Of a DNA stretch of 64,000 bases, positions 19,959-33,992 are shown in pieces. Every line of letters begins with the position of its first letter. Positions within the stretch are counted from its first letter, which is position 1. The position numbers and the translations under genes were made by a program. The stretch is taken from positions 206,384 to 270,383 of IMG/VR virus record IMGVR_UViG_3300022744_000020. The stretch is one strand, 5' to 3'. The notes below the pieces were generated by a model that had not been told where the DNA came from, searched no databases, and saw only the letters and a list, made by a program, of their open reading frames with translations.

Positions 19959-20795
19959 GTGACCACCAAACAAAAATCCGTCAAAATCGGGAAGATACTA
20001 GGATGCGCCGTTATCGGCGGCGTCGCCTTGTATTTCGCCGTCAAAATTCTGATTGCCACCATGGCGATCGTGGCCGCTGGAGCGATCGGCTTCACGGCTG
20101 TGATGCTCTACCCGACGTTCCTGGAGCTGTTGGCTTACAACCAGCTCCAAGGAATGATTGCCATCTGGAAAGGCAATCCTGGTTTTGCCTTGCGGCGAAA
20201 TCTCTTCGACATGAACGAGGATCACCAAAACCGATCCAAATCGACACTGCAACTCATCGGGGTTGGGCGCACCCTAGAAGATCGCCACGCCGAATCTTCC
20301 CGTCGATATCCGGACTCAGCAACCACCAGGTCTCTCCTGAGCCGAATCGACATGGTTCGTAAATCGGTTGATCATCAAAAGAAATTACTCGCCAATTCGG
20401 CTCAGGCTCTCGAGGCGTACGAGGCGCGGATTGAAGAGCTGGAATTTGATTGGGAGTCCGATCAGCAGATCAACAAGGCCGCGGGCATCTTGTCGGCGCT
20501 TACCGGACAAAGTCGCCGAGCCGCCATGCGTCAGGTGCGCGAAGACACGGCGCTCAAAGCGATCCGCAGCCAAGCAGCCGAAGCCATGGCGGCACTTGAG
20601 ATGTCTCAACTCGAAGGAAACGCATTCACCCGCGAGGTCGAAGTCTCGGCTCGCGAGAGTCGGATGGCCGAAGATCAGCGACAGAAGGATCGCGACCGCA
20701 CCATCGAAGCAGCGCCCCAACTGGAAAACGAATCCCGCCGTGGGCTGTTCGACAGCTTTCAGCAACAAGATTCTCGTCAAACCCAAAAGAAGTAA
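19959..20795 (+). CDS. Membrane-anchored coiled-coil protein, PspA/IM30-like
   Basis: Two N-terminal TMs followed by long amphipathic helices; GTG start after AAAGG. Confidence 0.5.
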   Translation: MTTKQKSVKIGKILGCAVIGGVALYFAVKILIATMAIVAAGAIGFTAVMLYPTFLELLAYNQLQGMIAIWKGNPGFALRRNLFDMNEDHQNRSKSTLQLIGVGRTLEDRHAESSRRYPDSATTRSLLSRIDMVRKSVDHQKKLLANSAQALEAYEARIEELEFDWESDQQINKAAGILSALTGQSRRAAMRQVREDTALKAIRSQAAEAMAALEMSQLEGNAFTREVEVSARESRMAEDQRQKDRDRTIEAAPQLENESRRGLFDSFQQQDSRQTQKK

Positions 20796-31422: not shown

Positions 31423-31474
31423 ATACTGCCCCTTCCTCAAAAAGGAAGGGGCAGTATGCTTTTCTTTTTCTTTT
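31423..31474 (+). terminator. 15-bp hairpin terminator with CAAAA loop
   Basis: Perfect stem plus T tract. Confidence 0.8.
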
Positions 31475-31521
31475 ATTCTCTGCCGGCAAGTAAATTCTCA
31501 AACTTAACCAGGAGTGCATCC

Positions 31522-32112
31522 ATGCAACCCCTTAAGCAATTGATTTTATTGCTGTGTTTTCTGTTCAGCACCAATGCGTTCAGTCACACACCGCAGTGGA
31601 TAACTCACCAAACTAAAGGCCGAGTAAGTCAATCTCTGGCTGTAAAAATTGTCTCTTTTGTGCATGCCTACTCACTCAAGCGGGATCTAGATCCTGACTT
31701 GGTGTTTCGGTTCATCACGGTGGAGTCAGGGTTTCGATACAATGCATTATCCAAAGCCAACGCTCGTGGATATATGCAAGTAGTACCACAGTACCACCCT
31801 GAAAAAATAAGAGGTCGCAACCTCTTTGATCTCGAAACCAACATTGAAGTTGGGACGGCAGTGTTTCAAGAATATCTACTCAAGTATGGTGACGTTGATA
31901 AAGCCATTCGCGCTTATCAAGGAAATCATCGCAGTGATGTCTACTTGAACAAAATTCGAGCAGTCAAGTTTATTGACTATCCGAATTACTACCCCAACAC
32001 ATCCCTCATTCCTGTCGAGTCGAATGCTGTAGATTTTAATGAACCTACATCATCAATTTGCGACGAGTTAGATCACTACGCTTGCATGCCTGACGAATTG
32101 CGTCGGCCATAA
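31522..32112 (+). CDS. Secreted lytic transglycosylase (SLT)
   Basis: Signal peptide; ITVESGF, GYMQV, NIEVGT, AYQG. Confidence 0.85.
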   Translation: MQPLKQLILLLCFLFSTNAFSHTPQWITHQTKGRVSQSLAVKIVSFVHAYSLKRDLDPDLVFRFITVESGFRYNALSKANARGYMQVVPQYHPEKIRGRNLFDLETNIEVGTAVFQEYLLKYGDVDKAIRAYQGNHRSDVYLNKIRAVKFIDYPNYYPNTSLIPVESNAVDFNEPTSSICDELDHYACMPDELRRP

Positions 32113-32180
32113 GCTTTTGATCTCTGCTCTGACGCAAATGTAAAACTCTTCATGCGCTAAGCGCAGAAAGAAATAGCCCC

Positions 32181-32720
32181 GTGATCAAATCACTCAAATG
32201 GGTCTTGATGACCCTGATTTTAAGTCTTTCGATTCCCTGCTTCCCGATGTCGGTGCAGTGGATTCAGTATGCGTCGTCAAACCGCATCGATCCCATCCGG
32301 GCAGTTTACCTCAAAGACATGATTGCCAGGATCGCCAAAGAGAAAGGCGTGCCGGTAAAGCTGGCGCATCAACTGATCTCTACCGAATCTGCATACATTG
32401 CCCGAGCCAAGCACGGCCCAGCAGTAGGAATGACCCAGGTCATTCCTAGGTTCCATCAAGATCGATTCTTGACTGGAAACTATTACAACGAGGAAAACAA
32501 CGTCCGAGCCGGGTTGGATTATTTGGCAGAGTGTTTGGAAGATGCTCACGGTAATCAGGCGGTCGCTCTGGCTCTGTACAACCGAGGACCGCATCGATAC
32601 GCATACGCCAGCAAAGTCCTTCGGGTGAACTTCAAGATACCAGCTTCATTCCATCGCTCTCAAGCAAAGAAACAATTGTATGCGAGCCGCGACGTGAGTC
32701 GACCACGGAGCAAGGGATAA
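32181..32720 (+). CDS. Secreted lytic transglycosylase (SLT), paralogue of upstream gene
   Basis: Signal peptide; ISTESAY, GMTQV, NVRAGLDYL, LYNRG. Confidence 0.85.
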   Translation: MIKSLKWVLMTLILSLSIPCFPMSVQWIQYASSNRIDPIRAVYLKDMIARIAKEKGVPVKLAHQLISTESAYIARAKHGPAVGMTQVIPRFHQDRFLTGNYYNEENNVRAGLDYLAECLEDAHGNQAVALALYNRGPHRYAYASKVLRVNFKIPASFHRSQAKKQLYASRDVSRPRSKG

Positions 32721-32769
32721 CTCCGATCATCTTGCTCTGACCGCTTGGTATCTCAACCTTGCTAAATCA

Positions 32770-33005
32770 GTGTACTCTTCTGTTATCGAGAGTAATCGTG
32801 ACGGGTGAAGACTGGGCTCGCCGGCCCCTCAAGTCGTGTCCTGTAACCCATGATCTGCTTTGAAATGAGTAGCACGGCAATTGTTCGGGATAGCCCCACC
32901 CAAGCCCAAACGCCATCGAGGTGAATGGACTAAGATAAGTAAACTCAGTGGGGCTCTTACGGTTGTATGCACGCACGCGACAACTCGTGAATTTACAGAG
33001 TGCGC
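32770..33005 (+). ncRNA. Candidate ~235-nt structured ncRNA
   Basis: Closing helix GTGTACTCT/AGAGTGCGC with nested helices, followed by a GAAA hairpin and T run. Confidence 0.55.
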
Positions 33006-33090
33006 AAATAAGAAATTATTTGTTTTGCACATCTGTTGCGTGAAGACGTCGAGTGATGTTCTTCTAGGGTGCACGTTTTGGAGGCGGATC

Positions 33091-33315
33091 ATGGAAAGAT
33101 TCGAGGTATGGATTTCAACATTCTGGGGAATGGGGCAGATCCAGCGTTCTCGACGGGTGTACGTCTGTCAGGCTAAGACTTTTGACGAGGCGTGCTCAAA
33201 ATTTGTCGAAAGATACCCCGAGTACCGAGAAGGTTGGAAGCCAGAGTCGCGACAAATTGGCTGGGATCAAAAGCTTTTCCCTTCCAAGAAAGAAGCAGAC
33301 GCGTACTTGAGATAA
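33091..33315 (+). CDS. Small hypothetical protein
   Basis: GGAGG RBS before ATG 33091. Confidence 0.7.
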   Translation: MERFEVWISTFWGMGQIQRSRRVYVCQAKTFDEACSKFVERYPEYREGWKPESRQIGWDQKLFPSKKEADAYLR

Positions 33316-33325
33316 GGGATTTTCA

Positions 33326-33413
33326 GGGTCCTGTCCCAACACCGGCCTTCTAAGCCGGCGACATAAAACGGTTGGACGGAAGTCAAGAAGTTCGATTCTT
33401 CCAGGACCCCCCA
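33326..33413 (+). tRNA. Atypical tRNA-Arg(UCU)-like RNA, 8/4 fold, no canonical D-arm
   Basis: GGGTCCTG/CAGGACCC acceptor, CCGGC-CTTCTAA-GCCGG anticodon arm, GAAG-TTCGATT-CTTC T arm, encoded CCA. Confidence 0.75.
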
Positions 33414-33422
33414 AGTCACCTG

Positions 33423-33479
33423 TCATACATTCACTCCAGAGTCCAAAAGACTCTGGAGTGAATGTATGATGCTTTTTTT
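33423..33479 (+). terminator. 21-bp hairpin terminator with CAAAA loop
   Basis: Perfect stem plus T tract. Confidence 0.8.
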
Positions 33480-33524
33480 ATGCCGATCTAAAATAGGGTA
33501 CAACCTCCTTGGAGAAATAGAAGC

Positions 33525-33992
33525 ATGCCTGATAACCACACTCAGCTCTGGACCAGTATTCGCCCCGGTCAAAAATGGCATTTCACTTTGCTGGCGATCG
33601 TTCCGAACCATTGGCTATCGAAATCGGGCCCGAGCATAAAGGAGAGAATTCAGCAGAATCCAGAATGCCTGAAAGAGATCCAGCGATTCACTGAAGACGG
33701 AAAAACTCTCTTTCATGGCGGTACCATGTTTGAGCTTAAAGCCACACATGGAGTTCCGCTCGATTTTCTGTTGGATAAAATTGTCAACGAGTTTGGCTTT
33801 GCTGTCAGTTGGATCGATTTCATTGAACAGTCGCGCAAGAATGGGAGATGGGATTTCCAGACCATCAAAGAGATTGATTACGGCCTCAAGGACGCAATGA
33901 TCGATCGACAGTACGCCGAAGGAATTCTGATCCGATGTAAGATCTACATGACACAAGTCGCTCACCCGCTTTTGAAGGAACAAACCAAATGA
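33525..33992 (+). CDS. Alanyl-tRNA synthetase helical-domain-like small protein
   Basis: GGTMFELKATHGVPLDF resembles AlaRS GxxAFxLYDTYGFPxD. Confidence 0.55.
   Translation: MPDNHTQLWTSIRPGQKWHFTLLAIVPNHWLSKSGPSIKERIQQNPECLKEIQRFTEDGKTLFHGGTMFELKATHGVPLDFLLDKIVNEFGFAVSWIDFIEQSRKNGRWDFQTIKEIDYGLKDAMIDRQYAEGILIRCKIYMTQVAHPLLKEQTK

What the first reader, a model, noticed from the sequence alone, without database searches (positions are those of the whole stretch)
32770..33025. Second structured ncRNA candidate (~235 nt) upstream of the tRNA-like gene
Seen: terminal helix GTGTACTCT 32770/AGAGTGCGC 32997; nested ATCGTG/CATGAT, GGGT/ACCC, GACT/AGTC and GGGC/GCCC; CTGCTT-TGAAAT-GAGTAG with a T-loop-like UGAAA; AGCCCCAC 32892/GTGGGGCT 32948; GGTTGT/ACAACT; a possible pseudoknot or alternative pairing TGGGCT 32813/AGCCCA 32903; then CAAATAA-GAAA-TTATTTG and a T run. 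The downstream gene has its own GGAGG RBS at ~33080, so this stretch is probably non-coding. Inference: riboswitch- or ribozyme-like RNA.
Basis: partly seen in the sequence, partly recalled or inferred. Interest (0 to 1): 0.7.

Follow-up and report, generated by a model that had tools for sequence, protein, structure and literature searches.

The report
Abundant new structured RNA in jumbo phage
The flagged stretch is the middle of a roughly 380-base, highly folded, non-coding RNA of a freshwater jumbo phage; it builds up far above its neighbouring genes in lake metatranscriptomes, matches no described RNA family, and its function is unknown.

Summary
The element is a real structured non-coding RNA, but larger than described: about 32694 to about 33074 on the + strand (about 381 nt), not 32770-33025.

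- **Expression:** In five metatranscriptomes, the only contigs across 5.9 kb fall at 32693-33083. Three start at 32693/32694.
- **Not coding:** Substitutions show no codon periodicity, and relatives carry 1- and 4-base indels. The TTG-32881 frame is closed in a relative.
- **Conservation:** The core is 89% identical to a relative whose adjacent gene is 68% identical.
- **Distant homologue:** Another phage shares the 3' domain, where 17 of 42 pairs change on both sides (0 of 500 shuffles reach this).
GGTTGT/ACAACT is strongly supported. ATCGTG/CATGAT, the UGAAAU hairpin and AGCCCCAC/GTGGGGCT are compatible with the variation seen.
The terminal helix is not conserved. The "terminator" is the tip of a longer internal helix and transcripts run past it. 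The pseudoknot has no support.
- **Family:** No Rfam family matches at E<=10, including RNase P, tmRNA, T-box, introns, GOLLD and ROOL.

Best reading: a stand-alone stable phage RNA of a new, narrowly distributed family. It is comparable in setting to ROOL/GOLLD.

The parts
32669..32693 (+). Conserved box just upstream of the RNA 5' end (CAATTGTATGCGAGCCGCGAC). It overlaps the last codons of the SLT-domain gene. It may be a promoter or a processing signal.
   Evidence: About 87-100% conserved in type-A relatives although the gene body is 68% identical. It is partly shared with the distant homologue L015, directly before the same GTGA start. It is not sigma-70-like and is not repeated elsewhere in the genome.
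32694..33074 (+). The RNA itself (about 381 nt). The 5' end is sharp; the 3' end is approximate (33061-33083).
   Evidence: Metatranscriptome contigs exist only here within 5.9 kb. Their 5' ends are at 32693/32694 in three runs, and their 3' ends at 33061, 33068, 33068 and 33083. Fold z is -2.86. There is no codon periodicity. It is single-copy in the genome.
32706..32739 (+). 5' hairpin (CGGAGCAAGG.../...UCUUGCUCUG) whose loop holds the SLT2 stop codon TAA at 32718-32720.
   Evidence: One G-C to A-U double change plus three one-sided wobble changes, and no breaks.
32749..32754 (+). 5' strand (UAUCUC) of a long-range helix that pairs with 32887-32892.
   Evidence: UAUCUC/GGGAUA becomes UGUUUU/AAAACA in L004, with 3 both-side changes in 6 pairs. 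This is the top-scoring covarying helix in an unbiased scan.
32887..32892 (+). 3' strand (GGGAUA) of the long-range helix.
32774..32793 (+). Variable hairpin (ACUCU...AGAGU).
   Evidence: Replaced in L004 by CGCCC-UGAUUC-GGGCG at the same place. The region is only 47% identical.
32795..32854 (+). Nested domain: AUCGUG/CAUGAU, GGU/ACC, GACU/AGUC and an inner GGC/GCC.
   Evidence: G-U to A-U (L004) and A-U to G-U (L020) in the outer helix. G-C to A-U in GGU/ACC. GACU/AGUC is invariant. The outer pair of GGGC/GCCC is broken in L004 and L020.
32855..32872 (+). Hairpin CUGCUU-UGAAAU-GAGUAG with a T-loop-like UGAAA.
   Evidence: Variants at 32860, 32867 and 32870 switch between G-U and Watson-Crick pairs. 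There is one mismatch in L020. UGAAAUGAG recurs in the distant homologue.
32892..32955 (+). AGCCCCAC/GUGGGGCU helix enclosing small hairpins (CCA..CGCC-AUCGA-GGUG..UGG).
   Evidence: Invariant in all type-A copies. The C32894-to-U variant in run X18 keeps a G-U pair.
32958..32989 (+). Hairpin with an invariant 13-nt apical sequence (A/G)UGCACGCACGCG.
   Evidence: 12 pairs, 6 with both sides changed against L015, and 100% of cells paired.
32995..33036 (+). Long hairpin ACAGAGUGCG-CAAAUAA-GAAA-UUAUUUG-UUUU-GCAC-A-UCUGU.
   Evidence: 6 pairs with both-side changes in the outer and inner parts (helices 2 and 3). RNA contigs continue past the T run.
33042..33064 (+). Hairpin GAAGA...UCUUC.
   Evidence: AGAG/CUCU in L004 and GGCG/CGCC in L015, giving 5 pairs with both-side changes.
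33064..33074 (+). Invariant 3' motif CUAGGGUGCA(C/U). CAC can pair with the 5' GUG, with the hairpin loop UGCAC at 32968-32972, or with UGCG at 33038-33041.
   Evidence: Identical in type A and in L015. The choice of partner is not resolved because all candidates are invariant.
33080..33315 (+). Neighbour, not part of the RNA: RBS GGAGG and a small ORF (ATG 33091, 74 aa).
   Evidence: Substitutions by codon position are 5/2/18, a coding signature. The ORF is cut to 34 aa in L004.
33325..33413 (+). Neighbour: tRNA-like gene with an encoded CCA end.
   Evidence: Rfam tRNA-Sec gives 27 bits, below the cut-off. It is 98.9% identical to L004 and has a compensatory acceptor-stem change in L005.
33423..33479 (+). 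Neighbour: 20-bp hairpin plus T run. This is the real terminator of the region.
   Evidence: with many compensatory changes.

Best explanation
This is a stand-alone, stable, highly structured non-coding RNA of a new family, encoded by a 270-kb freshwater jumbo phage.

Shown:
- It is made from the + strand.
- It has a fixed 5' end at G32694, 27 nt before the stop codon of the upstream transglycosylase-domain gene.
- It ends near 33074, just before the ribosome-binding site of the next gene.
- It accumulates far above its neighbouring messages.
- It folds into at least ten helices. The 3' third (three hairpins plus an invariant CUAGGGUGCA tail) is the conserved hallmark of the family. The 5' two-thirds vary between phage lineages.

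Inferred:
- The ends are sealed by pairing of the 5' GUG with the 3' CAC, which, together with the compact fold, would explain its stability.
- It acts in trans during infection as an RNA-only or RNA-protein particle rather than as a cis regulator.
- The invariant 13-nt loop UGCACGCACGCG and the 3' tail are its likely contact surfaces, either with each other or with a partner.

Its molecular target is not known.
For: **Source.** The window is the last 64 kb of a 270,383-bp virus record.

**Expression.**
- In metatranscriptomes X7, X11, X17, X18 and X21, the only contigs over 3.5-5.9 kb lie at 32693-33083.
- One is a 374-nt contig at depth 94.
- The 5' ends are at 32694, 32694 and 32693.
- The flanks are silent, so this is not DNA carry-over.

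**Non-coding.**
- There is no codon periodicity: 27/23/20, against 5/2/18 in the adjacent ORF.
- L004 carries 4-nt and 1-nt indels.
- The TTG-32881 ORF is closed in L004.

**Selection.** The core 32796-33026 is 89% identical between the window and L004, against 68% for the adjacent gene and 75% for the small ORF.

**Structure.**
- Fold z is -2.86.
- A long-range helix has 3 double changes in 6 pairs.
- In the 3' domain, 17 of 42 pairs change on both sides and 97% of cells pair. None of 500 shuffles reaches this, and slid controls give 1-4.
- In the 5'/central part, 6 pairs change on both sides, against 0-3 in slid controls.
- About 13% of paired cells in the 3' domain are G-U (my count). These would be mismatches on the other strand, so the RNA is on the + strand.

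**Homologue with a different context.** The 3'-domain model hits L015:5736-5856 at E 0.002-0.008 over its full length. There the RNA lies in a gene-free gap, starts with the same GUGA after a similar upstream box, and is followed by an unrelated gene.

**No known family.**
Against: - Function is not shown by anything here.
- Logan contigs carry no strand information and have ragged ends, so the 3' end is known only to within about 20 nt. Whether the 5' end is a transcription start or a processing site is open.
- Only two lineages are known, and type A has little variation, so much of the 5'/central structure is unproven. 14 of its predicted pairs are broken in at least one copy.
- The alignment was fitted to the model's structure, which favours that structure.
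- The RNA sits directly in front of an RBS, so a cis role in type A is not excluded.
- Expression of the type-B copy was not tested.
Confidence: 0.8

Rival explanations
1. A cis-acting 5' leader (riboswitch, attenuator or protein-binding leader) controls the small ORF and the tRNA-like gene downstream. The abundant fragment is the terminated or processed leader.
For: - The RNA ends 6-17 nt before the GGAGG/ATG of the small ORF.
- GGGAUA occurs twice (32714 and 32887), and both copies can pair with UAUCUC, so alternative folds are possible.
- The invariant 3' motif abuts a short U run.
Against: - No RNA contig enters the ORF in five metatranscriptomes.
- The ORF is truncated in L004.
- In L015 the homologous RNA precedes an unrelated 67-aa gene and is separated from it by a strong hairpin.
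- The U run is not conserved (GUUCUAAAG in L004).
- No riboswitch, T-box or leader model matches.
Confidence: 0.1
2. An excised intron or other processed by-product, such as a group I intron interrupting the transglycosylase gene.
For: - The 5' end falls exactly on a codon boundary of the upstream gene (32693 ends codon 171; read).
- The RNA is stable, structured and about 380 nt long.
Against: - No intron model matches at E<=10.
- No spliced joints were seen.
- The would-be downstream exon frame is not conserved: in L004 it gives 6 codons and then a stop (my reading of the alignment). It also overlaps a gene that is selected in another frame.
- The L015 copy is intergenic.
Confidence: 0.03
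3. A very divergent copy of a universal RNA, such as RNase P RNA or tmRNA, that serves the neighbouring tRNA-like gene.
For: - The size (about 380 nt) and the paired ends fit.
- It is close to a tRNA-like gene.
- From memory only, short strings resemble conserved regions of bacterial RNase P RNA (GAAGACUGGGCUC, CCCCACCC..AAGCCCAAA, UGAAUGGACU, ACAGAG). This is a lead, not a test.
Against: - RF00010 finds nothing in the whole phage at E<=10, while it rings in 11 of 14 control genomes.
- No RNase P or tmRNA model hits at E<=10.
- ARAGORN finds no tmRNA.
- The L015 copy has no tRNA-like gene within about 1.5 kb, and its central domain is different.
Confidence: 0.03
4. The stretch encodes protein, either the TTG-32881 extension of the small ORF or a micropeptide.
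For: An open frame of 70 codons precedes the ATG in the window.
Against: - The frame is closed in L004.
- Indels of 4, 1, 1 and 1 nt are present.
- Substitutions are 10/11/17 by codon position in that frame, and 27/23/20 over the whole RNA.
- There are no Pfam or PHROG hits.
Confidence: 0.01

Closest known systems
ROOL and GOLLD RNAs (large ornate phage/prophage RNAs, Rfam)
   Same: - Phage-encoded, elaborately folded and very abundant.
- No associated protein is known and no function is known.
- They often lie near tRNA genes (bioRxiv 10.1101/2024.12.08.627333). The type-A copy lies 250 nt upstream of a tRNA-like gene.
   Different: - There is no sequence or structure match to either model.
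- It is smaller: about 381-409 nt, where many GOLLD members exceed 800 nt and ROOL is about 580 nt from my own knowledge.
- The type-B copy has no tRNA nearby.
- Multimer or cage formation was not tested.
- It is known from only two phage lineages.
Phage T4 stable RNAs C and D (my own knowledge, not checked here)
   Same: Stable phage RNAs of unknown function, encoded beside tRNA genes and accumulating as discrete species.
   Different: The T4 RNAs are about 120-140 nt and are processed from the tRNA operon transcript. Here the RNA is three times larger and appears to accumulate separately from the tRNA-like gene.
Riboswitches and T-box leaders
   Same: A structured RNA immediately upstream of a gene. 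It has a T-loop-like UGAAA hairpin and an AGGGUG string near the RBS.
   Different: There is no model match. The downstream gene is not conserved across the family. The transcript is not continuous with the ORF in RNA-seq.

Membership tests
Any Rfam 15 family (including GOLLD, ROOL, riboswitches, T-box, ribozymes, group I/II introns, 6S and tmRNA) | A covariance-model match at or near the family's gathering score | tested here: not met
   - 0 matches at gathering score over the 64-kb window.
- 0 matches at E<=10 on 32640-33100.
- Nothing in this stretch in the scan of 32500-33600.
- Nothing for the L015 homologue.
Bacterial RNase P RNA (type A) | A match to RF00010 (P4 pseudoknot and conserved regions I-V) | tested here: not met
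   No hit at E<=10 in the whole 270-kb record. The same search rings in 11 of 14 control genomes.
tmRNA | A tRNA-like domain plus a tag reading frame | tested here: not met
   ARAGORN finds none in the window or the genome. No Rfam tmRNA hit.
   - RNA contigs continue to 33061-33083.
- The stem extends outward across the T run with compensatory changes.
- The simple scan did not call it.
Riboswitch / cis-regulatory leader | The same regulated gene class lies downstream across homologues, and the leader is continuous with the mRNA | tested here: not met
   - The downstream ORF is truncated in L004.
- The downstream gene is unrelated in L015.
- There is no RNA coverage of the ORF.
Riboswitch / cis-regulatory leader | Ligand-dependent structural switching | not testable with these tools
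   This needs in-line probing or reporter assays.
Self-cleaving or self-splicing ribozyme | Catalytic activity, or spliced or cleaved junctions | tested here: inconclusive
   No joints appear in the RNA contigs and no ribozyme model matches. Activity itself cannot be tested here. The sharp 5' end could be either a cleavage product or a transcription start.
Large ornate phage ncRNA as a loose kind (ROOL/GOLLD-like) | Phage-encoded, with extensive covariation-supported structure | tested here: met
   It lies on a virus record. 17 of 42 pairs in the 3' domain change on both sides. A long-range helix has 3 double changes.
Large ornate phage ncRNA as a loose kind (ROOL/GOLLD-like) | High cellular abundance | tested here: met
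   It is the only part of 5.9 kb assembled in five metatranscriptomes, at depth up to 94.
Large ornate phage ncRNA as a loose kind (ROOL/GOLLD-like) | Association with tRNA genes | tested here: inconclusive
   Type A has a tRNA-like gene 250 nt downstream. Type B has none within about 1.5 kb.
Large ornate phage ncRNA as a loose kind (ROOL/GOLLD-like) | Homo-oligomeric RNA-only assembly | not testable with these tools
   Complex prediction refuses RNA-only jobs. This needs SEC-MALS or cryo-EM.

The most novel reading that the evidence does not exclude
This is a previously undescribed class of phage RNA, about 380-410 nt, with a conserved 3' module (three hairpins, an invariant UGCACGCACGCG loop and a CUAGGGUGCA tail) and lineage-specific 5' domains. 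It is produced at very high levels during infection from a dedicated, non-sigma-70 start signal. It works as an RNA machine or scaffold, for instance a self-assembling particle or a ribozyme, possibly tied to the odd tRNA-like gene next to it.
Probability: 0.35. Interest if true: 0.8.

Novelty: new variant of a known kind. Interest (0 to 1): 0.62.

Why it matters
Large, abundant, elaborately folded RNAs of unknown function are rare. The few known ones (OLE, ROOL, GOLLD, raiA) have recently proved to form unexpected architectures. This one comes with three things that make it testable:
- defined ends;
- expression evidence from several independent lakes;
- a covariation-supported 3' module.

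It is short enough (about 380 nt) for chemical probing and cryo-EM. It also shows that jumbo phages in freshwater carry dedicated high-copy RNAs that annotation pipelines and Rfam miss.

Tried and rejected
**Searches that found nothing useful**
- Phage GenBank blastn of 32721-33500: no match.
- Self-blast of the genome and the 3'-domain model on the genome: single copy, no paralogue.
- The search for related loci with the two neighbouring proteins in viral contigs: nothing.
- Exact-pattern scans in viral contigs: 0 hits.
- Exact-pattern scans in genome contigs: 0 hits.
- The metagenome scan with a 20-mer returned only the window's own contig plus chance hits inside coding genes.
- A looser motif scan gave 3 loci that the covariance model rejects.
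- The homologues of the 155-aa protein (L002, L003) are not syntenic for the RNA.
- nhmmer with the type-A profile did not see the L015 homologue. It was found by eye and then confirmed by the covariance model.
- The upstream box is not a repeated phage promoter, and TAGGGTGC is not enriched in the genome.

**Ideas considered and rejected**
- RNase P, tmRNA, T-box, intron and coding readings were rejected, as set out under the rival explanations.

**My own error**
- Queries written as window:33092-33312 were one base out of frame, because the ORF starts at 33091. As a result, protein 4, all, and protein 4 are void.
- The in-frame query 32881-33312 had no family hits.

- Complex prediction cannot take RNA alone.
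- I did not pass a hand-typed full-length structure string to the count of structure pairs. I recomputed the equivalent counts in a script instead.

Full report
**Context.** The window is the last 64 kb of a 270,383-bp virus record that is estimated to be 98% complete. It is a jumbo phage from a freshwater metagenome and carries its own replication genes.

- Genes here are tightly packed on the + strand.
- The finding lies in a 370-nt gap between an SLT-domain gene (32181-32720; Pfam SLT) and a small ORF.
- Downstream come a tRNA-like element (33325-33413) and a 20-bp terminator hairpin.

- The + strand of 32765-33030 folds better than shuffles: z -2.35, with 1 of 200 shuffles as good.
- The - strand does not: z -0.78.
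- No Rfam family matches. This holds at gathering score over the whole window and at E<=10 on the local stretch.
- ARAGORN finds no tRNA or tmRNA anywhere in the genome.

**Expression and boundaries.** The sequence-run index lists many freshwater and wastewater runs that hold parts of this stretch, several of them metatranscriptomes.

- I laid five metatranscriptomes (X7, X11, X17, X18, X21) on 3.5 kb and then 5.9 kb. The only contigs fall at 32693-33083, and the neighbouring genes and the tRNA-like element are empty.
- X11 has a 374-nt contig at depth 94.
- Three independent runs start at 32694, 32694 and 32693. The 3' ends are at 33061, 33068, 33068 and 33083.
- A wastewater cDNA contig ends at 33073/33074 and runs into what I recognise, from my own knowledge, as a Nextera adapter. 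That run also covers the flanks, so I do not lean on it.
- The silent flanks argue against DNA carry-over.
- The RNA is therefore about 32694 to about 33074 (about 381 nt). It starts 27 nt before the stop codon of the upstream gene and ends just before the RBS.
- With these ends the fold z-score is -2.86, with 0 of 100 shuffles as good.

**Relatives.** Protein searches with the adjacent SLT gene recovered several contigs.

| Locus | Source | Relation to the window |
|---|---|---|
| L005 | JGI | about 95% nt identity |
| L004 | Logan | SLT2 protein 73% identical |
| L020 / L021 | JGI | L004-type SLT2 joined to a window-type RNA |
| L022 | Logan | window-like |

Identity between the window and L004, by region:

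| Region | Identity |
|---|---|
| SLT2 gene body | 68% |
| Small ORF | 75% |
| RNA core 32796-33026 | 89% |
| RNA 5' part 32694-32748 | 91% |
| Variable stretch 32749-32795 | 47% |
| tRNA-like element | 98.9% |

L020 combines an L004-type gene with a window-type RNA. The RNA therefore behaves as a separate module, with a recombination joint near 32655-32660.

**Not coding.**

- Substitutions in the small ORF (ATG 33091) fall 5/2/18 by codon position.
- In the RNA they fall 27/23/20 in any frame, and 10/11/17 in the frame of TTG 32881.
- L004 has a 4-nt insertion and three 1-nt deletions within the RNA.
- The 144-aa frame is not open in L004.

**Structure within type A.** An unbiased scan looked for helices that pair in all copies and carry double changes.

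- Top hit: UAUCUC (32749-54) / GGGAUA (32887-92) becomes UGUUUU/AAAACA, with 3 double changes in 6 pairs.
- Second hit: GAAG/CUUC (33042-45 / 33061-64) becomes AGAG/CUCU.

RNAalifold with the mapped ends gives 128 pairs.

- 10 pairs change on both sides, against 1-3 when the partners are slid.
- In the 5'/central part alone, 6 pairs change on both sides, against 0-3 in slid controls. However, 14 pairs there break in at least one copy.

Point variants seen in RNA contigs mostly keep pairing:
- 32709 A>G, 32867 G>A, 32870 T>C, 32894 C>T and 32972 C>T.
- 32886 C>T, in two of the three folds tested.
- 33003 C>A breaks its pair in every fold tested. 32957 T>C breaks its pair in two of the three.

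**A distant homologue.** A phage whose SLT2 is only 38% identical (P0006; loci L015, L016 and L017, identical here) has a 650-nt gene-free gap.

- The gap carries, in the same order, GUGA, UGAAAUGAG, (A/G)UGCACGCACGCG and CUAGGGUGCA.
- The last two motifs are 87 nt apart there, against 85 nt in the window.
- A covariance model of the type-A 3' domain (32958-33074) hits L015:5736-5856 over its full length. E is 0.008 over 84 kb and 0.002 over 25 kb.
- On the resulting alignment, 17 of 42 pairs change on both sides and 97.4% of cells pair. None of 500 shuffles reaches these values, and slid controls give 1-4.
- Caveat: that alignment was fitted to the model, which favours the structure.
- The L015 copy follows a hairpin and an AT-rich spacer. 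It is preceded by a box resembling the one before 32694. A strong hairpin and an unrelated 67-aa gene follow it.
- No tRNA-like element lies within about 1.5 kb of it.
- The 5'/central domains of the two types could not be aligned reliably.

**What it is.** It is a discrete, stable, + strand, non-coding, multi-helix RNA of a family absent from Rfam, known so far from two related jumbo-phage lineages.

- Strand: G-U pairs make up about 13% of paired cells in the 3' domain (my count). They would be mismatches on the other strand.
- Single copy: the model finds one copy in the genome.
- Rarity: pattern scans of viral, metagenome and genome collections found no further members.

**How it probably works (inference).**

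- The conserved upstream box and the identical GUGA start in both types suggest a dedicated start or processing signal. It is not sigma-70-like and is not reused elsewhere in the genome.
- The 5' GUG can pair with the 3' CAC. The same tail can instead pair with the invariant hairpin loop or with UGCG at 33038-33041. All of these are invariant, so the data cannot choose between them.
- The downstream gene differs between the types, and RNA-seq stops before it. A trans-acting role is therefore more likely than cis regulation.
- The nearest analogues in setting are ROOL and GOLLD. Both are phage-encoded, abundant, often lie near tRNA genes, have no known function, and are now known to form RNA-only cages. 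This RNA is not a member of either family.

**Rivals.** A cis leader, an excised intron, a divergent RNase P RNA or tmRNA, and a coding reading are set out in the rival explanations with their evidence. The RNase P resemblance is from memory only, and it failed the model test.

**Errors and limits.**

- Four protein queries were one base out of frame and are void: protein 4, and protein 4.
- Logan contigs carry no strand information and have ragged ends.
- Only two lineages are available.
- Function is untested.

Noticed in passing
window 33325-33413: - Structure: the tRNA-like gene has an 8-bp acceptor stem, a 4-bp T stem with a UUCGAUU loop, an anticodon-like arm (loop CUUCUAA, anticodon UCU), no obvious D arm, and an encoded discriminator plus CCA.
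- Conservation: it is 98.9% identical in L004 and has a U-A to C-G compensatory change in the acceptor stem in L005.
- Detection: ARAGORN misses it, and Rfam tRNA-Sec gives 27 bits against a cut-off of 47.
- Comparison: the 8/4 geometry recalls the 'allo-tRNAs' of PMC5389517.
   Followed up: partly
window 33525-33992: This 155-aa protein has a weak, sub-threshold hit to the alanyl-tRNA synthetase family (PF01411 positions 374-424, E 0.0044), right after the tRNA-like gene. The gene is absent from L004 and L005. Its only homologues are 36-38% identical, in unrelated contexts.
   Followed up: partly
window 33091-33315: The small ORF (74 aa) starts at ATG 33091 and shows a clear coding signature. 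In L004 it is cut to 34 aa by a deletion that brings the tRNA-like gene directly behind it. A loose end in a wastewater contig (X2) suggests the same shortened arrangement there.
   Followed up: yes
window 20267-20345 (- strand): A GAAGA...UCUUC hairpin followed by UAGGGUGC shares 13 identical bases (UCUUCUAGGGUGC) with the 3' end of the RNA. The 3'-domain model scores it 14.4 bits (E 0.4). It lies in what looks like coding sequence and may be chance.
   Followed up: no
L015 6650-7180; L002 2412-3211: These are other long gene-free, G+C-rich stretches ending in hairpins, in related or neighbouring phage contigs. They have no Rfam match and may be further unannotated RNAs.
   Followed up: no
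L020 versus L004 and the window, near window 32655-32660: L020 joins an L004-type transglycosylase gene to a window-type RNA. This puts a recombination joint just upstream of the RNA module.
   Followed up: partly
window 32806, 32922, 32987, 33040: GUGAA occurs four times in the 381-nt RNA, where about 0.4 would be expected. Two copies are invariant in L004, and a third keeps only UGAA. It could be a repeated tertiary or protein-binding motif.
   Followed up: no
window 31456-32720: Two SLT-domain genes lie in tandem. The first is 92% identical to L004 and the second 68%. The same tandem pair recurs in the distant relative L015, and L018 carries three SLT-domain genes in a row.
   Followed up: partly
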